DNA of 64,000 nt. It comes from Octopus sinensis. Its lineage: Eukaryota. The notes beneath the pieces were generated by a model. It was not told the origin of the DNA. It worked only from the letters and a program-made list of their open reading frames with translations, and searched no databases. The position numbers and the translations under genes were made by a program. Of this stretch, positions 12,365 through 64,000 are shown piece after piece. Where the stretch lies: the NCBI RefSeq assembly GCF_006345805.1, contig NC_043003.1:89652001-89716000 (forward strand). Direction: 5' to 3'. Numbering within the stretch: the first letter of the stretch is position 1; each line of letters starts with the position of its first letter.

Positions 12365-14108
12365 CATGGCACGACTTCGCGAACGAAGATCAGGAAGGCT
12401 GTCCACGTCGCGTGCATGCACGCTCATGACTGACAAGTCCGATATGGGAAAGGCAGGTCCGTGAGCAGTGTCCACAGATGAAGGTAACATCCAGTATGGT
12501 GTGAGAGGCGGCTCGCACCTTCCTCCTGCGTCTCTTGTCTTTAAGTGCGTCTCTTCTTTGTTACTCAAACTTGCTGACTGCGTTGAAGATCGTGTGGTGC
12601 CAGACATCACGGTCCGCAGCCAGGTCTGACCAGCATTGGTGGTTAATATGACATGCTGTTAGAGACTTCTTGAAGCAGTCTTTGTAGCGCTTCCTCGGAG
12701 CTCCTCTCACTCGGTGGCCGGTGGAGAGTTCGCCAAACAAGGCAATCTTTGGAAGGCGATGGTTCTCCATTCTGGAGACATGCCCTGCCCATCGGAGGTG
12801 GTACTTCAGTAGCGTGGCTTCAATGCTGGGGATCTCGGCCCGCTCCAAGACTTCAATGTTTGTGACGAAGTCACTCCAGTGAATGTTGAGGATGGTGCGG
12901 AGACATCGCTGGTGGAAGCGCTCGAGGAGACGGATGTGACTGCGGTAAGTGATCCAGGTCTCTGAGCCGTAGAGAAGAGTGGTGAGAACCACGGCCCTGT
13001 AGACACTGATCTTTGTTTTGTTCTTCAGGCCACCATTGTGCCAAACACGTTTGTACAATCTGCCAAAGGACCTATTTGCCTTGGAGAGTCTATTGTCAAT
13101 TTCTTTGTCGATCCTTGCATCGGATGAGATGATGCAGCCCAGGTATTAAACTGCTGTATTGATTTCAGTTCGGTACCGCAGATAGTGATGTGGGGTGGGG
13201 GGTATTCCTCTTGGGGTGTAGGTTGGTGAAGTACCTCCGTCTTCTTGAGGCTAACCTCCAGGCTAAAGAGCCGCGAGGCGTTTGCAAAGCAGGACGTGAT
13301 GCGCTGCAGAGCTCGCTCTGTGTGGGCGACAAGGACAGCGTCGTCTGCGAAGAGAAGGTCTCGGATCAACCTCTCCTGAGTCTTGGTGTGGGCTTGGAGG
13401 CACCGTAGATTGAAGAGACCGCCATCCAGACGATACCTAATATACACCCCATCCTCATCCTCCATATCTTCAGTTGCATGCTTGATCATCATGCTGAAGA
13501 AGATGCTGAAGAGAGTCGGTGCCAGGACGCAACCCTTCTTCACGCCGTTGGAAATAGAGAAGGGCTCCGAGAGGTCAACATTGAGTCTGATCTGACCACG
13601 CTGATTCTCGTGCAGCTGGATCACCATCTGTAGAACCTTGGTGGGACAGCCAAGTCGTTCCAGGATGAGCCATAGTCCTGTCCTGCTCACTGTGTCAAAT
13701 GCTTTTGTAAGGTCGACGAAAGTAGCATAGAGTCCCCTATTTTGTTCTCGGCACTTCTCTTGGAGTTGGCGGAGAACGAACACCACATCCGTTGTGCCTC
13801 TGTTGGAGGTTTTCTTCAGTGATGGTTAGTACTAGCCTATTGAGCATGATCCTGGCAAGTAGTTTGCTGGCGATGGAGAGTAGGGTGATTCCCCGGTAGT
13901 TGGAGAAGTCAGACTTTTCACCCTTGTTCTTGTACAGGTTTATGATGACGGCGTCGCGAAGATCCTGTGGCAGCTTGCTCTGCTCCCAGCAGCAGACAAG
14001 AAAATCATGGAGCTTGTCATGGAGCATCGGACCTCCATTCTTCCAGATTTCTGGTGGGATGCCGTCAACTCCTGCTGCTTTGCGACTCTTGAGCTGTCCT
14101 ATGGCTTT
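12365..14108 (-). mobile_element. 5'-truncated RTE-clade (BovB-like) LINE, disrupted ORF
   Basis: ORFs 13737-14261 (3' part), 13025-13786 (FVDLTKAFD, LFADD) and 12561-13058 (LLYGSETW, LRWAGHV). A C-terminal CxxC..H finger lies in a shifted frame near 12480. Confidence 0.92.
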
Positions 14109-20540: not shown

Positions 20541-22878
20541 TGAAATTCGGGTCCGCCCTGCCCTTCAAGGACAGAGGCCTTCCAGACCACTTCCGTACTA
20601 TGACCTCCACCTTGTTCACTACCTCGCCCCAATTCTTCTCCGCCTGGGAGTCCGGACCAAACTAAACTCCGAGCAACTTAACAGGACCATCTGTCCAGTG
20701 TCCGATGACACTGGACGATATCGTCTTGTTCCTCCTTGTTAACTTTTGTCCCTGCCACCGCTTCGTATCCCCGGAGAGCACCTTCTACACGAGGTAGTTG
20801 TGCTTCGTTGGACACAATGAGAGTGACGTCATCCGCATAGGCAGAAACAGACCTACCGCATCCGATTTCGTTTGGGTTGCCTCCTAACTTCTCCAACTCA
20901 AGTAATGACTCAAGAGCCAAAACGAACAGAAATGGAGACAAGGGACACCTTTGACGAACAGAACGCTTAATCGAAAACGGCTCCGTTCGGTAGCCGTTTA
21001 TCTGGACTGTGGACTTGATGCCGTTGTACATAGCGGAGACCCACCCGCGAAAGCCAGGGCCCAGCCCAGACCAGCCGCTACTAGGACCGCCCCCAGGTAC
21101 TGATGGTCTACCCGATCGAACATTTTACTTTGGTCTAAATGGACCAATGCCCCTCCTTTACTGGCTAATTTCCCAACCCTATCCAAGGTGTAGCGGAGAA
21201 GGTGAAGATTATCCTGGATCGACCTGCCTGGGATTGCGCATGTCTGCGCCTTCCCGCAAGTTTCTCCACGACAACCGTCAACTTTTTTGCTAGCACCTTG
21301 GCCAAAATCTTTAACTCTACATTAAGTAGAGTTATGGGCCTATAATTACTGATACTATCCCCCTTGCTCGGGTCTTTCTGGACCAGTGTCACAACTCCCC
21401 GGATCACAGAACTGGGAATCCTCCCATTCTGTTGCCAGTTTGCATAGACACCTGCCAGTAATTCCGCAAACAAGTCCGGTATACAACGATAAAACTCGTT
21501 GGGCAGACCATCTAGCCCCGGCGCACTCGGCCAACACCTCTTTTACCTCCTCGGTAGTGATCGGTCCTTCACAGCATTCAGCCTCACGTGTCGAAAGTCG
21601 CGGCCGACCGGCTAGGAAGTCCTTTAAGGGACCCCCCCCACCTCCACCCCGCTCAAGCAGACCACTCTCCCCGAATAACAGAGCAAAATGCTGGTGAAAG
21701 GCATTCTGCATCTCCTCCTGTCCATAGATCTTGTGCCCTCGCTCGTCCGTTAAAGACTTTATAGAGGACTTTCTACCTCTCTGACTCTCCACACGACGTG
21801 CCCATCCGGCAACATTAATACCTTCTCGCTTCCCTGCACGTAGCTTGGCTCTGGCTCTGCAACCTTCATGTTTGGCGTTGAGGTGGCGGTACAAGACCGT
21901 TCTCGCTGCCAACACTCTAGATGCACAGCCAGATTTCATTGCCTCATCTAAGTTCTTAACTAAATCGCCCTCTATTCTAGTCTTATCTAAACTTAGCTGC
22001 TTGATAAATCTAATGGACTCTAAACGGATGGCTCTTTTGATGGTGTGCCACCATCTATTGTTAATGATGGTTCCACATAATGCCCTCTGAACTAACTCCT
22101 TAATCCGAGTACGGAAAGCTTCACAAGTCAAAATAGACTTGTTCATTTTCCAGTACCCGGGTCCCTGTCTATGACATTTATCTACATGTACCTCACACGT
22201 CACAAGCTTGTGATCCGTGTAAGGCACAATACAAAATTGTGGACAACTGACACTATTCTTATCTCTTTCCTTAATAAATACCCTATCTAGGTACGATTTG
22301 CATGAGCCGTTGTTGTTACTCCACGTCCACTGTGGAACGCTCGGTTCATCCAGTCGGTAACGGTCTACTAGATTATAGTTCTCTAGTAGACTCTTGATGC
22401 AAGGATTCCCTTCCCTATCAGTTGAGCCCACACTATCGACCCGTGCATTGAGGATAGTGTTGAAGTCCCCTACCAAAATTAACGTTCTAGACGTTACTAG
22501 AAAGTGCTCCAGGTTCCGGTAGAACCCGGTCTGCCTACCCTCCATAGCAGCGTAGACAGCTACCAACCTGAAGGACTGTTTACTCACATGAGTCACATCT
22601 AGTACAACCAGCCTGCCTTCTGGGTCCAGAAAGACACTACTTATCTGTAAGTCTAAGTCCTTCCTGATAAGGATTGCCACGCCTGCGCCCCCTCCTCGGC
22701 TAGGAGAAATAAATTTCTCGTAACCATTCAGAAGAGACGAGAGCGCTTGAGGTCCACTCATCTTGGACTCGGTTACAATAACAACATCTATTCTGTGTGT
22801 CGCGAGGTCGTTCAGAAAACAAGTTTGTTTCCATCTCGACCCCATTCCACGCACATTCAAACAACCTAACTTAATCAT
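20541..22878 (-). pseudogene. L1/Tx1 ORF2 (APE-RT), frameshifted and truncated
   Basis: ORFs 21355-22878, 21165-21473, 20998-21186 and 20678-21031. Confidence 0.9.
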
Positions 22879-25989: not shown

Positions 25990-27261
25990 ATCATCTTGAT
26001 CCCCTTGACCGACCAGTCCGTCAGGCGTCCATTTGACACCGCTAGTCACATCACCCTGTCCACTTCTCTCTGGATCGCGCTTTTCTCATCCACATGATCC
26101 CAATCGTCCTCCTGAAATCGTAACTCCACCGTCGTGGAGGCCTTCCGGTTGGTCGTTTCCGCTCGCGCGGGTCCACCGACGTGAGCCGGGCGACGTGTTC
26201 AGCCCATCTAAACTTGCTGCGTGTATACTCTGCGATGACATCCCTCATTATGGACTTCTTTCTGACGATCTTGCTACTTATGTGCTCTCTCAACGAGATA
26301 CCGTTACCAGTCTCTGCTCTTCTCTCTTTGTGGTAGCCCATGTTTCACTACCATATAACATTGCAGGTAGAACTGTACTGTTGAGGTTGGCGCGAGTTGT
26401 ACTGTCCAACCTTCCCTTGAGTTCATCCCTTATGCCATTAAACGCCTTCCATCCGGCCCTTACTCTCCGTGAGATCTCGTTTTCGATATCTCGGCACATA
26501 TTCACTTCCTGTCCCAGGTAGACATATTCCTTTACCTCCTCTATTTCATCACTGCCGATCACCATTCGACCTGTTGGTACGTTGTCTGACCGCATGAACT
26601 TCGTTTTCATGCGGTTCATCTTGAGACCTACTGCAGAGCTTTTGATGTCGAGCTCCGTCAGCATGGTCTGAAACTGATCCATGGTTTCAGCGATGAGTAC
26701 GAAGTCGTCAGCAAAACGGAGGTGGGTGAGGAGCTCGCCATTGATGTTAACACCGCCTTGCCAATCGATGCCTCTGATGATCTGTTCGAGACATGCGGTG
26801 AAAAGTTTTGGGGAGATTGTATCTCCTTGCTTCACTCCCTTCTCGACCGGCACTCGTACGGGTGATGACAGTAGAGCTATGTCGGTGGTGTATCCGGAAT
26901 TTGCCTCCCTGAGCAGTTGCACATATTGCGCCTCGACTCCTTGCCTCTGCAGCGAGCTCAGCACTGCGTTGGTTTCGACGCTATCGAAGGCCTTCTCATA
27001 GTCTACAAACGCAACGCAAAGAGGCAGCTTGTACTCATTCACTCGCTCAAGCAGTTGTGTTAGAGTAAATATATGGTCCATCGTGGTGTAGTTCTTCCGG
27101 AAGCCGGCTTGTTCCCTCGGTTGTTGTTCGTCGAGATGACGTGATAACCTGTTCAGAATTATCTTCGTGAACAACTTGTACACGTGAGACAGCAGGCATA
27201 TGGGTCGGTAGTTCTTTAGATCTTCTCTATCAGTAGTTCTTTAGAGAAGATCTAAAGAACT

Positions 27262-29665: not shown

Positions 29666-30261
29666 GTGAGTTAAAGATCATTTAGCAAGATCGGATTGGA
29701 ATTTATTTATTACTATATTATTCAATTTGCAGTATATTGTTCTCCTAATCTACAAGTTATCGATAATGTTGAAAATATAAGGAGAAAACAAATGTCAATC
29801 AATTTGATTTTTATGTTTTTCTCAAGCTGCAATAAAACATTAATCGAGAGTCCTACTCCTGTCATGTTTAAAAATAAACGCTACTAGTTTGTCTACCTTA
29901 CAATCATACACGAACATCTAGTCTATCGCGTGTAGGGGGTTTAAATGATGGTAATTAGTTAAATACACAAACATAACTAAACCCCGCCCCAGTGTGTGTG
30001 TGTGTGTTGTTTAACCACAAAGTCAGGCATTTCAGCAAAGGCATTTCAGCTATACATTTTGCCATCTTTTTTTTTTTTTTATCAGTGACTACAATTGTCT
30101 TTCCTTTCATAAGATGACATTCAAAATGAGATTTGGCTGCTATTTCTAGCAGGTCCACCAGGATGCTCTGCCAGTTTACCACACACGTAGTGTGTGGTAT
30201 ATGTGCATGTATGTATGTATGTATGTATGTATATTTTGCGATGGTTTTCTGTATTGCATTC

Positions 30262-31610
30262 AGAAACTGCAGATACGGTGTTTACATCCATTATCGAACC
30301 TCTGGCAGCATATTTAATATCAGGCGCTTTGCTGCAAAAACAAAGGTATTTACCTCTATCATAAGAGACCTTTTGTATGCAGATGATTGTGAGCTAGTAG
30401 CACACACAGAGATTGATATGCAACACATTTTGAATGCATTCTCTGATGCTTGCACTGCCTTAGGATTGACAGTCAATCTCAAGAAAACTGTTGTCATGTA
30501 CCAACCTGCCCCTGGTAAGCAGTATAGTGTACCAAATATCTATGTGTATGGTAAACGACTTGATGTAGTTGATCAGTTTGTCTACCTGGGAAGCACTGTT
30601 AATAGATGTAGCACTTTGGATGATGAAATTCCAATCAGAATTAGGAAAGCGAGTGATGCGTTCGGAAGGCTAAAAAGGCGCCTCTGGAGTCGGCGAGACA
30701 TATGCAGAAAGACAAAGATAAAGGTGTACAAGACATGTGTGCTCCCTTCTCTTCTCTATGCCTACGAGACGTGGGTCACATATCGATACCACCTTAAACA
30801 ACTGGAACGTTTCCATCAGATGTATCTCAGACGGATCTACGGCATTAAGTGGGGGGACCGCATCAGTGATCTTGAAATATTGGAAGGCTCTCGGTGTGAA
30901 AGTATAGAAGCTCTTGTGTTAAAGCAATGGCTCAGATGGAGTGGTCATCTGGTCAGGATGAAGGATTCAAGGATGCCAAAACAACTATTTTATGGAGAGT
31001 TAGCTAAAGGAGAACGACCTCCACATAAACCAAAAAAGAGGTATAAGAACTTGCTGAAGGCTTCCTTAAGAGATGCTTGCATCTCTCCTGACACATGGGA
31101 AGGCATAGCTATTGATCATAGCAGGTGGAGAAGGATTGTGCACGAGGGGACAGCTACTTTTGAGAAATCTCGAGTTGCGCATGAGAAAGTAAGGAGGGAT
31201 GTCAGGAAGGGCGTCGCTGTTACACTTCCAGATGGGAAGGGTCTTCCTATGATGCTGACATGCAATGTCTGTGCAAGACCCTGCCTCAGTAGAGCTGGAC
31301 TCAAGAGTCATCTTCGTAGTCATGAAGCGAGGCAGATGAGAGACAACCTGGCCACTGGTGGTGGTGTAACACACCATACTAATATCTGTCAGGCATGTGG
31401 AAGAGAGTGTAATTTGGCAGGAGGACTTAAACGACATGCAAAGGTACATGAAGCCCAGTTACAACTACAGCCGGCTATTACCGGTAAAGGCTTTAGTTGT
31501 CAATTCTGTACAAGACATTGTAGATCTTCTGCTGGGCTAAAAAGTCACATTCGATCACAGCACCAGTAACATACTCGATAACATGGGGGCAGCCATCATG
31601 TATGTCTGTA
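30262..31610 (+). mobile_element. 5'-truncated RTE (BovB-like) LINE with uninterrupted ~435-codon C-terminal ORF and three C2H2-like fingers, in ETFBKMT intron 1
   Basis: LLYADD, FVYLGS, LLYAYETW and LRWSGHL motifs. Fingers CNVC..HLRSH, CQAC..HAKVH and CQFC..HIRSQH. Stop at 31569. Confidence 0.92.
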
Positions 31611-36453: not shown

Positions 36454-39400
36454 TTCCGACTTTGTAGAAGAAAGACGTGTTTCTTTCGCTCTGTGAAAAA
36501 AAAAAAAGGGGCTGCATAAATCAACAAAATAATCTACTAAAACTAACAAAAACATAGAACTTGTTATCTCATAACGGTCTACTAAAATATATTAATTAAA
36601 AACCGTAATATATTTCGCTTCGTAATATATATGCTGATGAAAGATGTCACTCCCACTTGGTAGACACTCAGGAAAACAAAGAAGATTCGAGTGAGAAACC
36701 TTCCTGGAAAGTACACCCAAGTACAAGTGCCCCTACCAGCATCAAAACGCAAAACCATGGAGATGAAAGAGCCAAGAAAGAAGTAAAAGAAGGAAAAACT
36801 AAAAGAAAAACAAAAACAAAAGATGGAACAGCCAAGAAAAGAAGCAAACCTGACTATCCATATAACAAAAAGCACAGAAAGAGACAGCACACACAAATGT
36901 GCAAATTCTACCTGAAAGATGTCTGCTGGCATGGAGAGGAAGGTGCAGGCTGCCGTTTTGCATGCTAAAGATCCCACCACATAAACATGAAACAGGGTGG
37001 AAACCAACTGCCAAAAGAAAAAGGAAAGGACTATGCACCACCTTCCCCAAAACGGAGGTACGCAGATGTAGTGTGTGTTACAAACCAAACCCATCAACAT
37101 GTTATTGAAAGGGCAGCTGCTGAACAAGAATCTTTTTTGTGCGTGGCACAAAAGATTGTACAGCAGCTGACCTGGCTCCATCAATCTCACAGATGGGACT
37201 ATCCACAATACACAAGACCACCACAGCAAATAGACCCAAGGTGGGCACCACTGGCAACAACACACACATCACATCAGTGCTCCTACTGAACATCAGAGGA
37301 CTGCTAACACTCAGTAACAGGACAAAAATCCCTTTCTTGAAAGACCTTGTTGCATGCAATCAAGCCTTATGCATAGCTTTTACGGAAACACACCCGAAAC
37401 CAGATATAGCAAATGCAGAAATACACATACCACAGTATGTTGTATTACGGACCGACAGAAAAGAAAGGAGTCATGGTGGAGTTGCTATGTACATCCGCGA
37501 AGACCTCACACCCCAGGTCCTTTTGTCATACTCAAATTCGGTGTATGACACACTTATTGTACATATAAGGCAACTCGGTGTAGTTATATGTGTTACATTT
37601 CGCCCTCCAGATGCTCCAAGTCATGTAGGCATTTTTGAAGACTGCCTTACAAAAATAGAAGAAGTTCTAGGCACATTAGAACAACACATAAGTGTACTTC
37701 TTATGGGAGACTTCAATCTGCCCAATGTCAGATGGCCCGAAGGCCTTTCTCTCCCAGGAATTACACAATGCGAATGAGGACAGGTGAGGTCCCTCCTGAA
37801 CCTCATCAACACTTTGTACATGGAGCAAATAGTAATCCAACCAACCAGGGCAGGTAACATACTGGATCTCTGCTTCACAAATAATATGGAACTCATCCAT
37901 AATGTGAAAGTGACACCGATGCTACTCTCGGATCACAACATGGTAGAGCTGACCATGTACGGGCCAAAGGAAAGCATGGACATGCAGCCTACAAGAAACT
38001 CTCAGAATCTTTCCAGCTTGAACTTCCATAAGGCAAACTGGAAACAAATTGAGAAAGAGCTCCTCAAACAAAACTGGCCTAAATGTCTCTCCTCACCAGA
38101 CATCGACATGAAACTTCAACAATTCATGTCTGTAATGCAAGCCATATGCTACAAATGTGTCCCAGAGAGAAAGGCCACTGTACACAAGAACAAAATCCCC
38201 AGAGAGAGGAAAATTCTAATGAGACGGTGTACAAAAGTTTCAAATCGCCTAAACAAACAAATTGAAAGCAGTGAAAAGTCCCGCCTGAAAATAAAACTGT
38301 TGGAAATTGAAAAATGTCTGCAACTCTCCCATGAAAACGAAAGAGCAGACAAAGAAGCCTGGGTTATAGATAACATAAAATCTAACGCCAGAGCTTTCTA
38401 CAAGTTTGCCAAAGAAACAGCTACAGTGCATTATAGGATAGGGCCACTCCTTGAAAAAGATGGTACACTCACAGGAAATCCAATGAGGATAAGTGAAATA
38501 CTAAATGAGCAATTCAAGAGTATTTTCATTCCACCCCTAGGGCATTTTCAAGTCAGCAATCCAACTGACTTCTTTACCACTGCAGATATAAAAACAAAGG
38601 CAATGATGATTGATTACATCAATATAAAGGAAGACGATATAATAAGGGCTATAGATGAAATGAACCCAAACTCAGCTACTGGCCCTGATGGTTTCCCAGC
38701 AATCCTTCTAAAAGTATGTAAGCGAGTCCTAGCAAGACCACTGCAGTTTCTCTTTCAGAGCTTCCTTGCAACTGGCAAACTTCCAAGAAAACTGAAGGAG
38801 GGTAAAATATGCCCTATTCATAAAGGAGGTAGCAGAGCAGAGGCCTAGAACTACAGACCTATCTCTCTGACCTCACACATCAGCAAGGTCATGGAACGAA
38901 TAGTCAGAAGGAAACTAATCGCCTTCTTTGAAGAAAATAACTTGCTGCCTGACACCCAACATGGTTTCCGACCAGGAAGAAGCTGCCTAACTCAGCTCCT
39001 ACAACACTATGACTGGGTGCTGAAACAACTGCTCAACCACTCAAATGTGGAAGTCATATATCTCGACTTTGCAAAGGCCTTTGATAAAGTTGATCATGGA
39101 ATGATATGTCACAAACTGCGTGATCTTGGCATAGTTGGAAAATTGGGAGAATGGGTTCAAGACTTTCTGAAGGATAGAAGTCAGTTGGTAGTAGCCAAAG
39201 GGGCCACCTCCATGCAAATAGTGAGCGGTGTTCCGCAAGGCACTGTTTTGGGACCACTGCTGTTCATAATGGCCCTCTCAGACATGCCCTCAGCCACGCA
39301 GAGAGCCACGATCACAAGTTATGCAGATGATACAAAAGTTTCACAGGTAATACAGAACCCTGAAGACACTATGCACCTGCAATGTGAGCTGGACGAAATA

Positions 39401-40300
39401 TACAAGAATAGCATGCAGTTCAATGCTGAAAAGTTTCAAGCTTTTTGCTATTAGCATGCAAAACTAAATGCAATACCCAATAAATACACTGGACCTGGAG
39501 GGATTGCAATCCCAGAGGCACAATCAGTGCGAGACCTGGGTATTTACATGAGTAATGATGCAACCTTTCATGTGCATGTTGCTAAATTGGCAATAAAATG
39601 TAGGTGGCTGAGTGGATGGATTCTTAGAGCTTTTAGAACAAGAGACCAGGAAACCATGATGGTCCTCTGGAAGACACTTGTCCTAAGCCACTTTGACTAT
39701 TGCTTTCAGCTATGGTCACCAACCAGTGTCAAGTTAATCACAGAACTTGAGGCGATCCAACAAAGCTACACAAAGAAGATAGCCTCTATGCAGCATATAA
39801 GCTATTGGGAAAGACTCAAGAAATTAAGACTCTATTCCTTAGAGCGTAGGTGAGAAAGATATGCCATAATATACATCTGGAAGATCCTGGAAGGACTTGT
39901 CCCAAACTTTGGCATCGAGAGTTTCACAAATACTAGAACTGGACACCACTGCACAGTGCCAAGGACTCCAAATTTGCCATCAAGATGTAGGACAAGATAC
40001 TGTGATAGCCTGGGCTTCAGAGGTCCACAGCTCTTCAATATCCTCCCGAAGGACCTGAGAGGCCTGCATGGGGTGGATGCAGATGTCTTTAAAATAAAAC
40101 TGGATCTCTTTCTGTCAGGTGTCCCAGATAAACCAACTTCACGACAGGAGGTGCAGATGAGGGCAGCTGCATCAAACTCTCTCATGCACCAAATGTCAAT
40201 TGCTAAAAAGCATTCGTGATGTAAAATCCTGTAGCAACACCGAATGGCGGTGCCCCAGCATGGCCACAGCTCGTGAGCTGAAACTAGATGAAATGAAAAA
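36452..40300 (+). mobile_element. near full-length CR1-group LINE (ORF1 with Cys/His motif, APE-RT ORF2 with stops), in ETFBKMT intron 2
   Basis: 5' AGACGTG motif at 36473, ORF1 remnant CKFYLKDVCWHG, APE LLNIRGL..ETH..MGDFNLP, RT YLDFAKAFDKV, VPQGTVLGPLLF and YADDTK, C-terminal YWERLKKLRLYSLERR, and a stem-loop/A tail at 40243-40300. Confidence 0.9.
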
Positions 40301-53302: not shown

Positions 53303-55670
53303 TCATCATCATCATCATCGTTTAACATCCGTTTTCCGTGCTAGCACGGGTTGGATGGTACGACCGGGGTCTGGGAAGCCAGGAGGCTGCACCAGGCTCC
53401 AGTCTGATCTGGCAGTGTTTCTACAGCTGGATGCCCTTCCTAACGCCAGCCACTCCGCGAGTGTAGTGGGTGCTTTTTACGTGCCACCGGCACAGGTGCC
53501 AGGGGAGTCTGGCAGCCGCCACGATCGGTTGGTGCTTTTAATGTGCCACCGGCACAGAAGCCAGTCAAGGTGGCGCTGGCATCAGCCACGCTCGGATGGT
53601 GCTTTTTATGTGCCACCGGCACAGAAGCCAGTTGAGGCGGAGCTGGCATATGGTTCAGATGGTGCTTTTTATGTGCCACCGGCACAGGTATCACAACTAC
53701 TATTTCCATTGATATTTATTTCGATGTTCATGTACTTGACTCAATAGGTCTCCTCAAGCACAGCAGGTTGTTCTGAAGTCCAAGGTACTTTGAATGGGCA
53801 GGGGCTATGGGGAACTGGTGCAGGAAGCAGCCCAGGTCTTTGCAGTTACAGCATATCTCCAGAGATCTCGGTCCTTCGTCATTGCCTCTGTGAGGCCCAA
53901 TATTCTGAGGTCATGCTTGACTACCTCATCCCATGTCTTCCTGGGTCTACCTCCCCCCCTGATACCTTCAACTGTTTGGAAGCGGCACTTCTTCACACTT
54001 CTCTCCTCATCCATCCGCAGTACATGACCATACCATCGCAAGCATCACTCTTGCACACCACATCTGATGCTTCTTATGTCCAGCATTTCTCTCAGGGTGC
54101 TTACACTCTGTCGTGCACGCACACTGACATTACACATCCAGCGGATCATGTTAGCTTCATTTCTTTCAAGTCTACGCATGTCCTCTGCAGTCACAGCCCA
54201 TGTTTCACTACCGTGAAGCATGGCAGTTCACACACATGCATCATACAATCTACCTTTCATTCTGAGCGAGAGACCCTTTGTCGCCAGTAGGGGTAGGAGC
54301 TTTCTAAACTTTGCCCAGGCTATTCGTATTCTAGTGGTGACACTCTCTGAGCATCCACCTCCACTACTAACTTGGTCACCCAGGTAGCGGAAACTATCAA
54401 CTACTTCTAGTTTCTCCCCCTGGAGTGTGATGGAATCTGTTTTCTGAGTATCTGTGGTGTGTGCTGAGTTCACCTTTCTGCTTACAATAACTTTGGTCTT
54501 TGCTACATTTACTCTAAGGCCCCTTGATTCTAACCCTTGCTTCCACACCCGAAATTTCTTTTCTAGTTCCGGTAGTGATTCTGCTATGAGAGCCAGGTCA
54601 TCAGCATAGAGGAGCTCCCAGGGGCAACCTGTTTTGAATTCCTCTGTTATTGCCTGGAGGGCTATGATGAATAAAAGGGGACTGAGGGCTGAGCCTTGGT
54701 GTACACCTACTTCTACCTGGAATTCTTCACAATATTCATTGCCAATCCTAACCTTGTTGACAGCCTCTCTGTATAGAGCCTGTACAGCCCTTATTAGCCA
54801 TTCGTCAATCTCCAGTTTCCGCATCGACCACCAGATAAGGGAACGGGGAACCCTGTCAAAGGCTTTCTCCAAGTCCACAAAAGCTATGTAGAGGGGTTTA
54901 TCTTTAGCTAGGTACTTCTCCTGCAGTTGTCGGACCAGGAATATAGCATCAATGGTGCTTCTACCCGGCACAAAACCAAACTGCATCTCATCTAAGCAAA
55001 TTCTCTCCCTAATGAGATGGGTTATGACCTTCATCACCTGATCCAACAGATTAATACCCCTGTAGTTATTTCTATCTAGAGCATCACCTTTACCCTTGTA
55101 GCAGTTGACTATGGTGCTGCTACGCGTCATTGGGTATGACTCCATTATGAACTACCTGGTTTACAATGCGGGTGACTAGGCCATAGCCCACACAACCAAC
55201 TGTCTTAAGCATCCCAACAGTGATTCCTGATGGGCCGGGGGCTTTACCTGGTTTCATACCCTTAATTGCCTTAACTACAAGAGAGTTTTCTATTCGGATA
55301 GCTAGTCCCTCTACTGAGTCAACACTTGGCAGGCTCTCCTCCTCCCATTCATCAGTCTTTCATAATGGCTTCTCCAAGCCTCTTTCTTTTCACCATCATC
55401 CATGCGGACACATTTCTCTCCTGTAACATCACTATTTTCTCTCACACACTGTCTAGCAATCCGAAATACCTCAGTTCTTTGGTCCTCACGTCGTTGGACA
55501 TTGGCAAACTTCTTTTCTGCTACATCTTTGGCTATGTATACCTGCCGCCCAGCCTCCCTTTTGGCTACCTGGTACAGTTCCCTGCTACTCCCATCCCTTC
55601 AGGCCTGTTTCTTTGCACTAATGGCTTTGTCTACTGTACTATTCCACCACAGATGTATAGTCTTGTCTTG
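53303..55670 (-). mobile_element. RTE-clade LINE, 5'-truncated, with minisatellite-containing 3' UTR and (GAT)n tail
   Basis: ORF 54228-55145 (FVDLEKAFD, VHQGSALSPLLF, LLYADDL) and ORF 53805-54041 (RWYGHVLR). The 3' UTR carries GAAGGGCATCCAGCTGTAGAAA. Confidence 0.92.
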
Positions 55671-55898: not shown

Positions 55899-56191
55899 TT
55901 ATACTTTATATAAATGTGTGATACAGTAAATTAAAGCAGCAAATTTATTATCCTTCTTAAAGTGAGACCGCCAAATAAATTCAGCTAAGAGAGACTGAAA
56001 TACAGCTTTGTCACTAGTTAGATGTTTCCGGCGCAATTTTCCCTTGACTCTAAGCCACATCCTGTCAATATCACTGGTTTGATTTTCTGAATCTCTTTCA
56101 ATTAGATTTATATAGTCGTGAGTATATATGCCTTGTTGGATTTGACTAATTTGAAGGTATTCAGCCCAAACACCTGACACAATGTGAGTAC
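55899..56191 (-). CDS. Merlin/ISXO2-like transposase-derived gene, last coding exon
   Basis: Acceptor TTTATTGTAG|GT at 56192/56191, in frame with the upstream exon. Translation THIVSGVWAEY..IDRMWLRVK..LLAEFIWR..FAALIYCITHLYKV*. Confidence 0.85.
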
Positions 56192-56789
56192 CTACAATAA
56201 AAATAAAGATATTTTGTCATCTCTAGATAATAATAGCCAATATAGATGTTGGCCCATTGGTTGGTTGATTTCTCCAGTTACACTTTATATAACATAAGAG
56301 GTGAAGAAAGATAATATAAGATAAAACAGCAAGTTAACATAAAAGATGCAGGACAAGGGTCCTGCAACTTCTTTGTTTAACTCAGAAAAATACATGTTTT
56401 TTTAAAATGAAATTTTGCAGAGATAGGTTTTCAATGGACTCAATTGCAACTATGTTGATAAAAAGAACAACATATATTTATTGCAAATATGAGAAATTTT
56501 CAAAATTTAATTAAGGTAATAAATATTATTCTTTTAGAAATTAGTATTCCATTTCTAAATTTTCCCAGGCATACCCATTGGGGAAAAAGTATACTTCCAT
56601 AATACCTATCAATATGACGAGTAACACTCTAATCAACAATCAGCAACAAAACGAAAGGTAAATAATTATAAAACCTGATTTTGTGTTGCTATTTATCCGT
56701 GAGCACAGATGATTTAGAAGCCAAATTGGAGCCTAAAATGTCCAGTTACTGAATTCATATACAAAAAAAAAAAAGGCACTGTTTTGATA

Positions 56790-57645
56790 GCCATACATGA
56801 AAAGTGAAAGTCTTTCTTCAGCAATTTCTGTGACAATATTCACTATCTGAGTGACATTGCTGTGTTTACTTTGCAAGTTGTGAAATTTGTATTTTTGTGA
56901 TCACGTGTGTCTGCTGTAGTCTGTGATTTTGTTGTGGACAGGAACAAAGAGTCAACGTGAAACTTTGTGTTAAACTTAGGAAGTCTGCTACAGAGGTATT
57001 GAGCATGCTTTGGCAAGCTTACAGCGAAGAGGCAATGAGTCATATACAATGTTTCGAGTGAGACAGGCACTTCAAAGGTGGAAGAATGTCCCTGGAAGAC
57101 CTTCCACAAGCGTCACCCGTGGAAATGTGCTAGTGTGCATTGGAAATTCGTCCCCCAGGGCCAAACCCATCGATTGACAATTATACTGCAACGTTTTGAA
57201 GCATCTGAAGGAGGACAGTGAGCAAAGACAACTGGATCCATGGAGCATGAAGAATTGGATTCTTCACAATGACAATGCACCCTGTCACCAAGCTCTCCTC
57301 ACTCGTGAGTTTCTCACCAAAAACAACATGGTATCACTTCTGCACCTACCCTATTCACCAGATTTATCACTTGTGGACTTTCATCTCTTCCCCAATATGA
57401 AAAAGCTACTCAATAATCATCATTTTAACACCACTGTTGAGATCCAGAGTGAATTGCAAAAGGTCCTCAACTTGCTTACAGAAAACAAATCCCAGGCCAG
57501 ATTTCAAAAGTGGCAGGAATACTGGGACTGGTGTATTGCTGTGCAAAGTGACTATTTTGAAAGAGATGATGTTAAAACTTAGAACTTAGGCAAATAAGTT
57601 ATTTTTTTTTTATCAAACATAACTAGTCCAGGAACTTTTTGATAT
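56790..57645 (+). mobile_element. mariner transposon, internally deleted
   Basis: WILHNDNAPCH, PYSPDLSLVDFHLF and KWQEYWDWCIAVQSDYFE. Confidence 0.88.
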
Positions 57646-57684
57646 CACTTTTGATATGCACAGAAATACATACACACACATATA

Positions 57685-59315
57685 CAGAGTGCCTCAAAAA
57701 GATTTACCTATGTTTAAAACTCTTCCTAAAGAATATCGGTTGAGGTAAAATTATTGCAAAACATGACCAGATTGTCGCTTTGAAAACAGCCAGAGTGAGC
57801 AACAAGGACACGACAAAACAGTTGAATGTGTGCCATAAAGCAGTGGTCAATACCTGGAAACAATATATGGAGTCTGCTACTACCTTTAGCAAGCTAACTC
57901 CTAGTAGGAAACAATCAGTTTGTAACAAACAAATTGTTGAAGATGTGAAGAAGCAAATGAACCGAAATCCCTGCAGGAGTGCAAAAAAAAAAAAAAACTG
58001 CAAAAGCTCTTGATATTTTGAAATTGTCAATGCACAGGATTTTTAAAGAGGATTTAAAGTTAACTGCATACAAGAAATAATCCCAGTAGTTAATTTCACC
58101 AGCTCCCAAGAAGAAACGGCTTGGTAGGAGTAAAACCATGTTAGCTGAGATGAAGTGCACCACTAACAAAGTGTTGATCTGGTCTGATGAGAAGATCTTC
58201 ACCATAGAGGCAGTTACCAACAGGCAGAGTGATAGGCTTTATGCATGTAATGCAGGAGACTTGCCTGAAGATAACAGGAATCGTTTACACTGTCAGAAGA
58301 CAGCTTCACTCATGGTGTGGGGCGCAGTTGCATCTGATAGGTTCAAGTCTCCCTTGATCTTCATCAATGCTGGTGTCAAAGTCAACAGTGAAGTTTATGC
58401 GGAAATGTTGGATGACAAGAGTGTTACCCTGGGTCACAGAAACCTTTGGTGACCATTATGTCATGCAAAGAGAATTTCAGTGGTCTTTGAGACAAGACCA
58501 TATGGCCTCCCTCCAAGTCCAGACATCAATTCCATGGACTTTGCTATTTGGTCCATCATAGAAATCTTTCTGCTTGCTCCTATTCAAATGTGTCAGATCT
58601 GAAGAAAGACCTTCTCTCTTCATAGGTCAAGTTGACTGAAGAGGTGGTATGGCACTCATGCAACTCAGTGACCACTCATTTGCAGGCTATGGTCAAGGAG
58701 AAAGGTGGTCATTTTGAAATGTAATTACTGCAATGGATTGACAATTTACATTAAAACACATGTGCCAAATTTCATTATCCTACCTTAAGTTTCATCGTCA
58801 TCGTTTAACGTCCGCTTTCCATGCTAGCATGGGTTGGATGATTTGACTGAGGGCTGGTGAACCAGATGGCTGCACCAGGCTTCAATCTTGATCTGGCAGA
58901 GTTTCTACAGCTGGATGCCCTTCCTAATGCCAACCACTCCAAGAGTGTAGTGGGTGCTTTTACGTGCCAGTCAGGCGGTACTGGCAACGGCCTCGCTCGG
59001 ATCTTTTACACATGCCACCGGCACAGGTGCCAGTAAGGCAATGCTGGTAATGATCACGCTCAAATGGTGTCTTTTATGTGCCACTGGCACGGAGGCCAGA
59101 TAGCCACTCTGGCAACAATCATGCTCGGATGGTGCTCTTAATACCCTACTAACACGGGGCTCGAGTGCCAGTAAGGCGACGCTGGTAATGATCACACTCG
59201 AATGGTGCCTTTTAAGTGCCACTGGCATGGAAGCCGGTTAGCCACTCTGTCAATGATCACACTCGTATGATGCTCTTAAAAAATATCAATGGGTAAATGT
59301 TTCTGGGACACCCTG
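57685..59315 (+). mobile_element. Tc1/mariner (maT/DD37D-like) transposon with TIRs and TA TSD
   Basis: TA|CAGAGTGCCTCAAAAAGATTTACC at the left end and GGTAAATGTTTCTGGGACACCCTG|TA at the right end. Motifs IWSDEKIFT, MVWGAV and WPPSSPDINSMDFAIW. An RTE tail is inserted at 58793-59278. Confidence 0.88.
58793..59278 (-). mobile_element. RTE 3' UTR fragment with minisatellite
   Basis: Same family as 53303-53790. Confidence 0.85.
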
Positions 59316-60790
59316 TATACACTAAAGTACATCAAGATAAGCAATTCAGAAAATTAAAGAAATAAAAATTTTTTACATCAATTGCTGAAGAAACTTTTAC
59401 TTTTCATGTATGGCTATCAAAAGAATGCCAAAAAGTTTCTAAGCAAACAACAAAACACATTGAAAGTTGCTGTCCACAACTCATGTCAAAAACTGTCCAA
59501 GACAGAGTTTGGTTTTCAAATTTTAGGACTTCTAGTTATTAGAGGATTGGTGGGAGGGACAAAATGAGTAACTTCTGTTTTTTTTTTTTTTTCCCTACTA
59601 GTCTGAAATCATTAGATTGCAAATAATGGATCATCGTTTTGTATTATTATATTATATTTACGAGTTAAAAATTGGTCAGCATAATTGTCGTTGGAGTCCA
59701 GAACATGGCAGGTCCACTTTTTTCAAGAAAAGTTTCAACTTTGACCTGATTGTAATTGAGATTGCTAACAAAATATCTGGAAAATTTTTGGTGCTTAACA
59801 ATCAATATTCTGTTTTCTAAAGGATTCCAAGTCAATTTTTCCCACATGTTCAAGTTGATAATTTTCAATGTCTAAAATGAGTAACGACTAATTTCAATGA
59901 TTTCTTCTCTTTAACTACACGGTGTGTAAATATATCATGAAGGGGACACTCCAGCAGATTGTGAAGAAGCTATAGAAAATATTTTATGTTGAATTTTTTT
60001 TTTCATTTAGCCAAGTTCCATAGATTTCATATAATGTCCTATTTTTCCCTGATTATTTTTCATTTTACCTGGATATTTAAAATTTTTGTTGCATTTCTGA
60101 TATCTTAGGACGGATAATCATGTGTATGAGTCTGTATCCTGGAGAATTGAAGCGGCAAAATTACTTTATTTTGCCCCAGCCAAATTTGCCTTTTATATGC
60201 TTTATAAGAGAACGGCAATAATTTTCTAAAACAATGATCAGATTGTTATAATGCTTTTAATGCATTTAGGGAAGCAATTTGCTTGGCTGATATAGTTTTG
60301 AAAGGTAGTGAATATTTGTAAAAAAAAAATTGTAAAAAAAAATATTTTGTCTCTAATGCAGCAAAAACACCTCATTTTACCCCACCCACCCCTATATAAA
60401 CACTATAATTCATTTCAGACGAAATAGGAGGCATTTCTCTAGAATCGAATCGGAAATCATTCAGTTTGCCCAAAACTACTTTCTTCGGATGAGTTTCAAG
60501 TATTGTAAAATACTATTCTGCAGTAAATAAATTAATAATAAAATAAAAAAGGAGGGTAAATTTTTACTATTTTATACCAGTCAGCAGATTCTGATATACC
60601 CTCGGCAATAGCTATAGTAACCTCATGGAGAAGGAAATGAACAAGGAATTGGGTGATTGTTTCCTTCAGTAGAATTTTTGTACCCCAAAATAAGACGTTT
60701 TTACATTTTTACTTCTACCTCCACCCCAATTCCGTGTCCCTTTGCCATAAAGATTTACTACTGCATTACTATATTATTACTATATTATTT

Positions 60791-62723
60791 GGTTAATATA
60801 GGGCGTAACAAATATCAGAAAATCAAAAAAAAAATGTGTGTAATAGGTGTAAAACAACTTCCTATGAACGAATATGAAAAAAAAAATTCGCGCACGCGAA
60901 AGGAGGGTGGGGGAGAGGCCTCGGAAAATTCACATCGGGAAGTTCCGAAAGCGTCTGAGGAGCTGACCCGGGCACCAAAACCAAAAAAAAATAGTGTAAT
61001 ATGTGTAAAACAACTTGCTCTAAACGAATATGACAAAAAAAAATGCGCTCTCGCGAAAGAGGGGTGGGGGAGAGGCCTCGGAATATTTATATCGGGAATT
61101 TCCGAAAGCGTCTGAACCGGGCACAAAAACAAAAACAAAAACAGCGTAATAGGTGTAAAACAACTTGCTCTAAACGACTATCATGAAAAAAATGCGCGCT
61201 CGCGAAAGGGGGGTGGGGGAGAGGCTTCGGAAATTTCACATCTTCAGTCCACGGCCTTTAAACTAAGAAAAAATAGTGTAATTGGTGTAAAACTACTTGT
61301 TCTAAACGAGTATCAAGAACACACACTCACACATGAATCATAAACTCCGTATTTCGCAAAAAAAAAAAAATAAAGAGAAGAAATTCTGGAAAAAGTGAAG
61401 AAATGTTGGATCTCCGCCATGTGAATCAAAATACGTGTCAGAAACATCTTGAAATACTACAGAAATTATGTTACGAAAATGATAATGTATACATACCTCT
61501 TTGAGTGGTCCATCGATAATGATGATAAAGAAATGAGTTGGATTTAAACTCAGAATATTGACTAACACAACTACATACTACAAGACTCAAAATATTCAGC
61601 CAAGTCACCACCCTTTAACTAGCAATAATAATAACATCAATAACATAACAGCCAAAAGATTTATTTGTTCTGAAAATAACAATCATAGTAAATAAATATG
61701 TTCTTTAATATTCACATTCATGTGCACAGTTAAACACACTTACATACAAACAGTCACGCATGCATAATACAAAACGGAACACATAAATGAAGGATGCATT
61801 ACTTAGTATATATTACATCTAGAGAATTTTGATTAATAAGTCAAATATGCAAATTATAAAGATAATTAATTGCTTTACTAAACAGTGTTGTAAAGGTGAA
61901 AAAATAAATTTGGGAAAAAAATACACGCCAAAACTAATTAATAAAGGATAATTAGGGAAGGATTGACACAAAATAATAATTTTTTCTGTCTCTTTTTTTC
62001 TGATAAATGCATCTTAATAAGTGAGAAGAATTGCATATATCTGAACTATTTCAAAGAAAAGCATAAATTTAATGTTTAAAATAGCTTTAACCAAGGAATG
62101 AGATCTAACATTTCTTCACTTTTTCCAGAATTTCTTCTCTTTATTTTTTTTTTTTGCGAAATACGGAGTTTATGATTCATGTGTGAGTGTGTGTTCTTGA
62201 TACTCGTTTAGAACAAGTAGTTTTACACCAATTACACTATTTTTTCTTAGTTTAAAGGCCGTGGACTGAAGATGTGAAATTTCCGAAGCCTCTCCCCCAC
62301 CCCCCTTTCGCGAGCGCGCATTTTTTTCATGATAGTCGTTTAGAGCAAGTTGTTTTACACCTATTACGCTGTTTTTGTTTTTGTTTTTGTGCCCGGTTCA
62401 GACGCTTTCGGAAATTCCCGATATAAATATTCCGAGGCCTCTCCCCCACCCCTCTTTCGCGAGAGCGCATTTTTTTTTGTCATATTCGTTTAGAGCAAGT
62501 TGTTTTACACATATTACACTATTTTTTTTTTTGTTTTGGTGCCCGGGTCAGCTCCTCAGACGCTTTCGGAACTTCCCGATGTGAATTTTCCGAGGCCTCT
62601 CCCCCACCCCCCTTTCGCGTGCGCGAATTTTTTTTTTCATATTCGTTCATAGGAAGTTGTTTTACACCTATTACACACATTTTTTTTTTGATTTTCTGAT
62701 ATTTGTTACGCCCTATATTAACC
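60791..62723. mobile_element. foldback-like element: ~623-bp near-identical modular inverted repeats with 687-bp spacer
   Basis: Arms 60791-61413 and 62101-62723, each with three to four ~120-bp sub-repeats and GGTTAA ends. Confidence 0.9.
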
Positions 62724-63087
62724 GATTTACTACTGCACTAGTCTCACGAGACGGACGTAAAAAGCTTTTTCCTGTCCGTAACTTTTCATTTTCGAACTTC
62801 TTTTGGAATTTTTTTTTTTTCAGACTTTAAACATCTGGGATTATGATTCCTATAAAAATTTTAAAATATGCGTAACCTTTTAAATTTGAATTTCGAAAAT
62901 AAAAAAAATTGAAAAAAAAAAAACAGGAAAGACGGGGTTGGCAAATTTTCTCTTTTGTGTGTGGCGCCATAATCTACGATTCTTAAAACATAATAGTAAA
63001 AAAAAGGGCGGGGAGTTTTTTGGCGTACTAGACATTTTCCGAATATTCTACATGAATGTCGAAATGTGGAATTTTATTAAATCATAC

Positions 63088-63787
63088 CTGGCAAAACCCA
63101 ACGAACAATTGCAGCTTCGAAAGCTTCTTTATTTCGATGTTCAATTGGCACTAGAAAACATTTTTCACTTCCTCGTTCAATTCCTCCAAAAACCTTATAT
63201 CCTTTCACATGTTTTTTCCCGTTAGGTTTAGGTTTGGAAATTGTGGTCACATCTATTTCGACGACTTTTGGTTTACCAGTTTGTGAATCGAAACCGCCTA
63301 TCTCCGGTGGGTCGTCACCTAATTCAGTCGGATGGTCTTCTAAGAATCCTTCCAATAATTCTCGGATATACTGACACAAATCATCGATAGTGTTTACATT
63401 GACTTTTGTTTCGTGAGCTATTTCAGAATTTAGATGCTCTCTGGACCACATATACATAAGCCATATAAATGTTGTCAGTGAGACGTCACTATCCTCAAAA
63501 ATCGATCCGATGCGGACTGACTGAGTGAAGGAGTCCAGATCACATTTCCATCTCTTTCCGTCAATATCTTCCGGATGATCGACCAGTGTACATAAATTGC
63601 TACAGGTGGAACACTTCACGCAATTGCTAATTAGCCGGTGTTTGGCTAACCATGTAATTGCTACTTCATTTGTGTTAGTTTGGGGGATTAGATCAAAGAA
63701 TTTCCATGTTTCTTGTCGAATTTCTTGGTCATTCATGACATCACTGCATATTGTTGTTGGCTCTGCTTGTCCGGCAGGATCAATCAT
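63088..63787 (-). CDS. Merlin/ISXO2-like transposase-derived gene, main coding exon
   Basis: Open 233 codons from ATG 63787, with a possible acceptor at 63803 so an upstream exon may exist. CSTC..DGKRWKC, GSIFEDS, VVEIDV, VFGGIERGS and WVLPG motifs. Donor CCAG|GTATGA at 63087 (phase 1). Confidence 0.88.
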
Positions 63788-64000
63788 TTCAGAAGAAGTC
63801 AACTTTTATAAAACAAATAATTCATGTGTCAACTACAAGCAATGTGTTTATATGGAATTTTTGTTTTAGTAGTGTTAGTTTCGTATTGCTTACCGGCAGA
63901 GCTTTTGTCACATTTTGTATTACAGGCTGTTAGCTTCGTATTATTTCATTAAATTTCATTGCAAACCAGGACATCAACGAATCCTTCATATGTTTATCAA

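What the first reader, a model, noticed from the sequence alone, without database searches (positions are those of the whole stretch)
55899..63802. Intron-containing, catalytically altered Merlin/IS1595 transposase: probable domesticated host gene
Seen: two ORF-track fragments 6.9 kb apart join through canonical phase-1 splice sites (CCAG|GTATGA at 63087 and TTGTAG|GT at 56192) into one stop-free ~330-aa ORF, ..WVLPG|THIVSGVWAEY.. The intron has accumulated mariner, maT, RTE and foldback insertions while both exons stayed open, and I see no TIRs. Against ISXO2/Merlin consensus as I know it, VEIDE became VEIDV, SDxW became SGVW (second Asp lost), IE.xW became IDRMW, and the second CxxC of the zinc ribbon became CDLD. 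Inference: this is an exapted, catalytically dead DNA-binding or chromatin protein, in contrast to all other transposases in the window, which are shattered.
Basis: partly seen in the sequence, partly recalled or inferred. Interest (0 to 1): 0.8.

Follow-up and report, generated by a model that had tools for sequence, protein, structure and literature searches.

The report
Octopus gene derived from Merlin transposase
This is a real two-exon octopus gene that descends from a Merlin/IS1595 "jumping gene" enzyme, has lost a catalytic residue and its transposon ends, and has been kept by natural selection in several octopus species, so it is a domesticated transposase of still unknown function.

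Summary
On the minus strand, exon 1 (63787-63088) and exon 2 (56191-55899) join through GT/AG sites in phase 1. The product is 330 aa and 100% identical to NCBI's model XP_029639343.1 (LOC115214311, Octopus sinensis).

O. bimaculoides has the orthologue in collinear synteny, with the same splice sites and the same altered motifs. A third, unnamed octopod has exon 1 with the same donor site.

- dN/dS is 0.20-0.24 (p = 6e-4 to 1e-8).
- The CDS is 97.5% identical between species, against 84-90% for intron and flanks.
- There are no terminal inverted repeats and no second copy in the window.

The second triad Asp is Gly, the Glu next to the first Asp is Val, the third residue is Asp instead of Glu, and the fourth zinc ligand is Asp.

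The gene belongs to a monophyletic Octopus family of eight paralogue lineages. Each is 1:1 across species. The three lineages read at DNA level share this intron position and have dN/dS of 0.07-0.24. Three lineages have each lost a different triad residue.

Best reading: a domesticated, non-catalytic Merlin-derived protein, probably DNA-binding. Function and expression are untested. It is a new member of a known kind.

The parts
63088..63787 (-). Exon 1 coding part (Met1 to the first base of codon Gly234). It encodes the N-terminal helices, the Cys cluster/zinc ribbon, a helical (HTH-like) region, and strands beta1-beta3 plus helix alpha1 of the RNase H-like core.
   Evidence: An in-frame stop lies 6 codons upstream of the ATG.
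56192..63087 (-). Phase-1 spliceosomal intron of 6,896 nt (GTATGA...TTGTAG). It holds transposon debris.
   Evidence: The orthologous O. bimaculoides intron is 4,687 nt and aligns at 85-90% identity. The position and phase are the same in paralogues.
55899..56191 (-). Exon 2 coding part (the last two bases of codon Gly234 through Val330, plus the stop at 55901-55899). It encodes beta4, beta5 and the C-terminal helices.
63533..63613 (-). Zinc-ribbon-like Cys cluster, C59-x2-C62 ... C82-x2-D85. The fourth ligand is Asp, where relatives have Cys.
   Evidence: C59, C62 and C82 are Cys in 85-87 of 89 relatives, and position 85 is Cys in 78/89. The paralogues have His or Asp there.
63251..63253 (-). 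Codon of D179, the first triad Asp, which is kept (VEID). The next codon is V180, where relatives have Glu.
   Evidence: D179 lies on beta1 (175-183) of the model.
56172..56174 (-). Codon of G240, the position of the second triad Asp. The Asp is lost (SGVW).
   Evidence: D in 81/89 relatives. D in all seven other paralogue lineages, G in this gene and its O. bimaculoides orthologue. The position lies directly after beta4 (236-239) in the model.
56064..56066 (-). Codon of D276, the position of the third triad residue. It is Asp here, where relatives have Glu (IDRMW).
   Evidence: E in 80/89 relatives. The position lies on helix 273-288 of the model.
60791..62723 (.). Foldback (long inverted repeat) inserted in the intron. 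It is specific to O. sinensis.
   Evidence: arms of 387 nt at 100% and 201 nt at 99% complementarity. Window 60768-62864 has no counterpart in O. bimaculoides.
57178..57579 (+). Tc1/mariner-type transposase fragment inside the intron (open stretch of 134 aa).
   Evidence: Pfam DDE_3, E = 7.6e-4, 19.8 bits, below the cut-off. The HNDNAPCH...YSPDL..DFHLF motif is read directly from the translation.

Best explanation
LOC115214311 is a host gene of octopods that descends from the transposase of a Merlin/IS1595-type DNA transposon.

Shown:
- It is a single-copy, TIR-less, two-exon gene at an orthologous, syntenic position in O. sinensis and O. bimaculoides. Exon 1 is also present in a third octopod.
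- It evolves under purifying selection.
- It belongs to an Octopus family of eight old paralogue lineages (dS between the paralogues measured about 1.2-1.4). Each lineage is 1:1 across species. The three lineages read at DNA level have the same phase-1 intron.
- The predicted protein keeps the whole transposase architecture: N-terminal helices, a Cys-cluster ribbon, a helical DNA-binding-type region and an integrase-like RNase H fold.
- The acidic triad reads D-G-D instead of D-D-E. The Glu next to the first Asp and the fourth zinc ligand are also replaced.

Inferred:
- Without the second Asp the site cannot hold the two catalytic metal ions, so the protein no longer cuts or joins DNA.
- What selection preserves is the non-catalytic part of a transposase's job: sequence-specific DNA binding and/or oligomerisation.
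- It most likely acts as a DNA-binding regulator. It could instead be a binder or repressor of related Merlin elements, which are abundant in octopus, or a non-catalytic partner of the paralogues that still have three acidic residues.
For: Gene model: the joined ORF equals NCBI XP_029639343.1.

Orthology: the O. bimaculoides gene (XP_014784396.1) has the same GT/AG sites. L001 9788-25678 is collinear with window 64000-34841, including the downstream methyltransferase gene.

Selection on this gene:
- 13 synonymous against 12 non-synonymous changes, dN/dS 0.235, p = 5.6e-4.
- Exon 1 against the third octopod: dS 0.25, dN/dS 0.20, p = 1e-8.
- CDS 97.5% identical, against 84-90% for intron and flanks.

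Selection on the family: orthologue pairs of two other paralogues give 0.114 and 0.065. Paralogue-to-paralogue comparisons give dS 1.2-1.4 with dN/dS about 0.2.

Not mobile: no inverted 11-mer is shared by the two flanks. There is one copy in the window. The family tree shows 1:1 orthologues and no species-specific bursts.

Triad: position 240 is D in 81/89 relatives and G here and in the orthologue. Two other paralogue lineages lost the first Asp (to G) and the third residue (to S/N) independently; the first of these, the one measured, has dN/dS 0.114.

Fold: AlphaFold pLDDT 85, pTM 0.81. The three triad positions fall on beta1, just after beta4, and on the following long helix. The best PDB fold matches are retroviral integrase cores and TnsB (Foldseek probability 1.0).
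Against: - No transcript or splice-junction reads could be examined. The only support for splicing is the identical NCBI model and conservation of the splice sites.
- Loss of catalysis is inferred from one residue. No IS1595/Merlin transposase structure exists to confirm the triad assignment.
- A family-specific invariant Glu (E244) sits four residues after the lost Asp and might substitute for it.
- dN/dS of this gene (0.235) is the highest of the three paralogue pairs measured, so constraint may be partly relaxed.
- DNA binding and nuclear localisation are untested.
- Genome-wide copy number was judged only from annotated proteins and read-assembly fragments, not from a whole-genome DNA search.
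Confidence: 0.82

Rival explanations
1. The gene is domesticated but still catalytic. The remodelled site (D179, D276 and the family-specific E244, or residues supplied by a partner paralogue) supports nuclease or recombinase activity, so the protein cuts DNA for the host.
For: E244 is invariant in all eight octopus members examined and is Glu in 0 of 89 relatives. Five of the eight paralogue lineages keep three acidic residues, D-D-D. The RNase H fold is predicted with high confidence.
Against: Three paralogue lineages lost three different triad positions; the two of these that were measured (this gene and LOC115214035) still show dN/dS well below 1. That is what one expects if the triad is dispensable. 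The Glu next to the first Asp, kept in 85/89 relatives, is lost in every family member. Gly at 240 offers no side chain.
Confidence: 0.08
2. It is an old, immobile Merlin relic that is simply decaying slowly. The open frame and the GT/AG pair are chance, and the NCBI model is an annotation artefact.
For: The window is full of transposon debris. Octopus bimaculoides has many Merlin-like sequences (191 reported in PMC8101967). The Pfam score is only just above the cut-off.
Against: The frame has been open and under purifying selection over dS 0.07, 0.25 and more than 1.2. The exons are far better conserved than the intron and flanks. The splice sites are identical in orthologues and at the same codon in paralogues.
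Confidence: 0.03
3. It is a still-autonomous Merlin transposon whose transposase gene carries an intron. Purifying selection would then act on transposition competence.
For: Intron-bearing transposase genes exist in eukaryotic DNA transposons. The closest non-octopus relatives keep the full D-D-E triad.
Against: - There are no TIRs.
- The chromosomal position is the same in two species, with collinear flanks.
- There is one copy per species among annotated proteins.
- Intron length differs between species through nested insertions.
- The second Asp is lost.
Confidence: 0.02

Closest known systems
Merlin (eukaryotic) / IS1595-IS1016 (bacterial) DDE transposases, Pfam DDE_Tnp_IS1595 (PF12762)
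   Same: The C-terminal domain is homologous. A profile of the octopus family finds 11,267 relatives, 504 of them below 1e-30, mostly about 320-330 aa with the same layout. The conserved blocks VEID, S-x-x-W and I-x-x-x-W..K align column for column. The fold is integrase-like RNase H.
   Different: There are no TIRs or TSDs, the gene is single-copy and syntenic, and it has a 6.9-kb intron. The triad is D-G-D instead of D-D-E. The Glu after the first Asp and the fourth Cys are lost. It is a descendant of the family, not a transposon.
Putatively domesticated Merlin-like genes of protists: Stentor and Perkinsela (PMC8101967), and the macronuclear DDE_Tnp_IS1595 genes of Oxytricha and Blepharisma (PMC3558436, PMC9942806)
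   Same: These are TIR-less, conserved Merlin-type transposase genes at syntenic positions, interpreted as domesticated.
   Different: They are in unicellular eukaryotes and are independent events. In the papers found, no animal Merlin-derived host gene family with orthologues, an intron, dN/dS estimates and triad decay is described.
Animal host genes derived from other DDE transposases that work without transposition (pogo-derived CENP-B and relatives, mariner-derived SETMAR). This comparison rests on my own knowledge of the field. Octopus CENPB, THAP and HTH-Psq expansions are reported in PMC10027918.
   Same: The pattern is the same: a transposase ORF kept under purifying selection, transposon ends lost, catalytic residues altered, and the DNA-binding part retained.
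   Different: The source superfamily is different (Merlin). No fusion to a host domain is seen. The survey in PMC10027918 does not mention Merlin or IS1595.
PiggyMac and its catalytically inactive PgmL paralogues in Paramecium (own knowledge, not tested here)
   Same: This too is a family of domesticated transposase paralogues in which some keep the acidic triad and others have lost it.
   Different: The superfamily is different (piggyBac). There is no evidence of programmed DNA elimination in octopus, and no evidence that the octopus paralogues interact.

Membership tests
Merlin/IS1595 transposase protein family (homology) | Significant match to the DDE_Tnp_IS1595 domain | tested here: met
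   Pfam PF12762 scores 30.4 bits against a cut-off of 27, E = 4.6e-7, residues 197-309. A profile search recovers thousands of relatives.
Merlin/IS1595 transposase protein family (homology) | Intact D-D-E catalytic triad | tested here: not met
   D179 is kept, position 240 is Gly (D in 81/89 relatives), and position 276 is Asp (E in 80/89).
Merlin DNA transposon (mobile element) | Terminal inverted repeats (5'-GG...) flanking the transposase gene | tested here: not met
   No inverted 11-mer is shared between the 2.5 kb upstream and the 2.5 kb downstream in the O. sinensis locus. None of the 25 longest inverted pairs brackets the gene.
Merlin DNA transposon (mobile element) | 8-9 bp target-site duplication | not tested
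   Without TIRs there are no element ends at which to look.
Merlin DNA transposon (mobile element) | Multiple dispersed, similar copies | tested here: not met
   There is one copy in the window. Each annotated Octopus species has one protein at 90% identity or more, and the paralogues are 59-67% identical with dS above 1.2. The whole-genome DNA copy number is not testable with these tools.
Domesticated (exapted) transposase gene | Orthologues at a syntenic position in different species | tested here: met
   The O. bimaculoides locus is collinear over about 16-29 kb, including the neighbouring methyltransferase gene. Exon 1 is present in a third octopod.
Domesticated (exapted) transposase gene | Purifying selection on the coding sequence | tested here: met
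   dN/dS is 0.235 (p = 5.6e-4) and 0.20 (p = 1e-8). The exons are 97.5% identical, against 84-90% for intron and flanks.
Domesticated (exapted) transposase gene | Transcribed and correctly spliced | not testable with these tools
   The support is indirect only: NCBI's model is identical and the splice sites are conserved. The read-assembly fragments found are unspliced genomic read-throughs.
Domesticated (exapted) transposase gene | Host function (phenotype, DNA binding) | not testable with these tools
   No experiment or publication was found for this gene or its paralogues.

The most novel reading that the evidence does not exclude
The eight-lineage Octopus family may be the first Merlin-superfamily domestication described in animals. 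It may also work as a system rather than as eight redundant genes. Under this reading, the paralogues that keep three acidic residues (D-D-D plus the family-specific E244) would retain a host-directed DNA-cleavage or recombination activity. The triad-defective members, including the window gene, would be their non-catalytic partners or regulators, as in the PiggyMac/PgmL arrangement of ciliates.
Probability: 0.1. Interest if true: 0.85.

Novelty: new member of a known kind. Interest (0 to 1): 0.5.

Why it matters
Domesticated transposases are a recurrent source of new regulators and of programmed DNA-rearrangement enzymes. Merlin is one of the superfamilies for which the papers I could find describe no animal host gene.

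This case offers a small, old, octopod-restricted gene family. It has clean 1:1 orthologues and a shared intron. Three of its paralogue lineages have each lost a different catalytic residue, which makes a natural series for asking which transposase functions are kept after domestication.

Octopus genomes are rich in Merlin-like sequences. A TIR-binding, non-cutting relative is therefore also a candidate transposon repressor. If the family proved to bind specific DNA sites in neural or developmental tissues, it would add to the list of lineage-specific cephalopod regulators.

Tried and rejected
- A protein search with the exon-2 peptide alone, meant to find exon 2 of the third octopod and see whether Gly240 is older, returned no candidates. 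The age of D240G beyond the O. sinensis / O. bimaculoides split stays unknown.
- I looked for spliced transcript contigs among the read-assembly (Logan) members of the protein clusters. P0013, P0010, P0029 and P0030 are all unspliced read-throughs of the donor site, so they give intron-position evidence but no splicing evidence.
Scans of the ten longest open stretches gave only one weak DDE_3 hit, so 'maT' and 'RTE' are unverified.
- I tested whether P0075, a triad-defective 322-aa protein from an unnamed sequencing run, is a distant cephalopod member of the family. Neighbour-joining puts it next to the octopus clade, but it is only 33% identical and is closer to other relatives (42%). This is unresolved.
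- A paper search for the run accessions, to name the third octopod, found nothing.
- A profile search of solved structures found no IS1595/Merlin structure.
- The idea that the 'intron' is one transposon insertion with an AGGTA target duplication was rejected. The interruption lies at the same codon and phase in paralogues that diverged at dS above 1.2, and part of its content differs between species.
Full report
**What is in the sequence.** On the minus strand an ORF runs from 63802 (first ATG at 63787) to 63088 and ends CCAG|GTATGA. A second open stretch begins after TTGTAG at 56191 and runs to the stop at 55901-55899. Joining 63088 to 56191 gives a phase-1, stop-free reading frame of 330 codons from the ATG, reading ..WVLPG|THIVSGVWAEY... 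An in-frame stop lies six codons upstream of the ATG, so no upstream coding exon is needed.

The 330-aa product is 100% identical over its whole length to NCBI XP_029639343.1, 'uncharacterized protein LOC115214311' of Octopus sinensis. The window is the reverse strand of chromosome CM016865.1 near 89.7 Mb. Pfam finds the ISXO2-like/IS1595 DDE domain at residues 197-309, at 30.4 bits against a cut-off of 27.

**Orthologues, synteny and selection.** O. bimaculoides encodes XP_014784396.1 (LOC106879382). It is also 330 aa, with 11 amino-acid differences, the same two exons and letter-identical donor and acceptor sites. Its intron is 4,687 nt, against 6,896 nt here.

The O. bimaculoides locus is collinear with the window from 64000 down to about 34841, including the downstream methyltransferase gene. 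The coding sequence differs at 25 of 993 positions (97.5% identity). The aligned intron and flanks are 84-90% identical.

Nei-Gojobori counts are 13 synonymous and 12 non-synonymous changes. That gives dS 0.066, dN 0.015 and dN/dS 0.235, with a binomial p of 5.6e-4 against neutrality.

Read assemblies of two runs from a third, unnamed octopod (SRR11869384 and SRR11869391) carry exon 1 with the same CCAG|GTATGATTTAA donor. Against both Octopus species its dS is about 0.25 and its dN/dS is 0.20 (p = 1e-8).

**Not a mobile element.** No inverted 11-mer is shared between the 2.5 kb upstream and the 2.5 kb downstream of the gene in O. sinensis. Shuffled controls often do share one. None of the 25 longest inverted pairs in the locus brackets the gene. 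The window holds no second copy at protein or DNA level. Each annotated Octopus species has one protein in the 90% cluster.

**The motif changes.** A profile of the octopus proteins found 11,267 relatives in 1.84 billion representative proteins, 504 of them below 1e-30. I aligned 89 roughly full-length non-octopus relatives. The named ones come from arthropods and a sponge, and many are unnamed metagenome or read-assembly proteins.

| Position in this protein | State in 89 relatives | State here |
|---|---|---|
| 179 (first triad Asp) | D in 82 | D (kept) |
| 180 | E in 85 | V |
| 240 (second triad Asp) | D in 81 | G |
| 276 (third triad residue) | E in 80 | D |
| 283 | K in 85 | K (kept) |
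| 59, 62, 82 (Cys cluster) | C in 85-87 | C (kept) |
| 85 (fourth ligand) | C in 78 | D |

The O. bimaculoides orthologue has the same states.

**Predicted structure.** AlphaFold2 with a 22-sequence alignment gives a confident model (mean pLDDT 85, pTM 0.81). It has N-terminal helices, three short strands over the Cys cluster, a helical region at 104-151, and then a beta1-beta2-beta3-alpha-beta4-alpha-beta5-alpha core. D179 sits on beta1, G240 directly after beta4, and D276 on the long helix at 273-288. These are the canonical places of a DDE triad.

The best PDB fold matches are retroviral integrase catalytic cores and the TnsB transposase (Foldseek probability 1.0, E about 1e-5 to 1e-4). No solved structure of this family exists by sequence.

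**The gene is one of a family.** Searches return seven further 90%-identity clusters, all from Octopus and 59-67% identical to this protein. Consecutive locus numbers (LOC106879047/48/49 and LOC106868236/37/38) suggest local clusters. In O. bimaculoides, LOC106879047 lies within 10 kb of LOC106879048.

A neighbour-joining tree shows a monophyletic octopus clade of eight lineages. Seven have orthologues across O. bimaculoides, O. sinensis and, for six of them, O. vulgaris; the eighth (LOC106879049) was seen only in O. bimaculoides. There are no species-specific bursts.

The phase-1 intron lies at the same codon (LPG|T), with the donor GTATG, in every family member examined:
- the two paralogue lineages read at DNA level (LOC115214035/LOC106879048 and LOC115219899/LOC106877799);
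- LOC106879047, as judged from its exon-1 boundary;
- the read-through fragments P0010, P0013, P0029 and P0030.

The nearest outgroups are intronless at that codon.

| Comparison | dS | dN/dS |
|---|---|---|
| This gene, O. sinensis vs O. bimaculoides | 0.066 | 0.235 |
| This gene, exon 1 vs third octopod | about 0.25 | 0.20 |
| LOC115214035 / LOC106879048 orthologue pair | 0.111 | 0.114 |
| LOC115219899 / LOC106877799 orthologue pair | 0.149 | 0.065 |
| Paralogue vs paralogue | 1.2-1.4 | about 0.2 |

Every family member has lost E180 (to V, I or M) and the fourth Cys (to H or D). All have E276 replaced by D, except one lineage that has S or N there. All carry a Glu at position 244, which is never Glu in the 89 relatives.

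Three lineages have each lost a different triad position:
- the first Asp, in LOC115214035/LOC106879048 (VEVGM);
- the second Asp, in the window gene;
- the third residue, in LOC115219239-X3/LOC106868237.

Independent loss of different triad residues, with dN/dS staying well below 1 in the two such lineages measured (this gene and LOC115214035), is the strongest indication here that selection does not act on catalysis.

**Interpretation.** The shown facts are those expected of a domesticated transposase: orthology, synteny, constraint, no transposon ends, an old stable family and a broken triad. The mechanism is inferred. A DDE site lacking its second carboxylate should not hold the two metal ions needed for DNA cleavage and strand transfer. 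What is preserved is then the DNA-binding N-terminal half, with the RNase H-like core serving as a scaffold or oligomerisation module.

Three roles are candidates. I rank them in this order, but none is tested.
1. A sequence-specific DNA-binding regulator.
2. A repressor that occupies the ends of related Merlin elements. O. bimaculoides has 191 Merlin-like sequences according to PMC8101967.
3. A non-catalytic partner of the paralogues that retain three acidic residues.

The window gene has the highest dN/dS of the three pairs measured, so some relaxation on this lineage is possible.

**The intron.** The O. sinensis intron is longer mainly because of a foldback at 60791-62723, with arms of 387 nt at 100% and 201 nt at 99% complementarity. 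O. bimaculoides lacks it. A Tc1/mariner-type fragment at 57178-57579 gives only a weak DDE_3 hit. The rest of the window is rich in LINE reverse-transcriptase and endonuclease ORFs.

**Comparison with what is known.** Domestication of Merlin-type transposases has been suggested for Stentor and Perkinsela (PMC8101967). DDE_Tnp_IS1595 genes are encoded in ciliate somatic genomes (PMC3558436 and PMC9942806). [quoted passage not shown] No paper in the searchable library names this gene or its paralogues.

The finding is therefore a new member of a well-known kind, the domesticated DDE transposase, from a superfamily rarely reported as a source and apparently not yet reported in animals. The absence of a report is limited to the library searched.

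**Verdict.** Expression, splicing and function remain to be shown.

Noticed in passing
window 56160-56162 (codon E244); alignment: Glu244 (WAEY) is invariant in all eight octopus family members examined. It is never Glu in the 89 non-octopus relatives, where Ala occurs in 57 of 89. This is a family-specific acidic residue four positions after the second triad position.
   Followed up: partly
window 60791-62723: The foldback in the intron has arms of 387 nt at 100% and 201 nt at 99% complementarity, and O. bimaculoides lacks it. It is either a very young insertion or an inverted-duplication assembly artefact.
   Followed up: partly
window 13028-13786(-), 21358-22878(-), 26293-27183(-), 30133-31566(+), 38891-39451(+), 54231-55145(-): There are several LINE-type ORFs. 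Five match RVT_1 (reverse transcriptase) and one 507-aa ORF matches Exo_endo_phos (endonuclease). The 478-aa ORF at 30133 also ends in C2H2 zinc-finger matches.
   Followed up: partly
L010/L011 (Logan SRR32906209/10), protein P0075: This is an intronless 322-aa relative from an unnamed organism. It is also triad-defective (VEIGVT, NIKSLW) and shares the rare Val after the first triad position. Neighbour-joining places it beside the octopus clade, but it is only 33% identical. It could be a distant member of the family or an independent decay.
   Followed up: partly
L005 1-1505 and 10001-15102 (O. bimaculoides CM046607.1): Two family members (LOC106879047 and LOC106879048) lie about 8.5 kb apart on opposite strands, in head-to-head orientation. 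In O. vulgaris, one gene model fuses the neighbouring ribosomal protein S10 gene to a family member (CAI9726404, 437 aa), which is probably an annotation artefact.
   Followed up: no
L001 9130-9572 and 15968-16405: Assembly gaps (runs of N) flank the O. bimaculoides orthologue. They end the upstream alignment artificially at about 425 bp before the ATG.
   Followed up: yes
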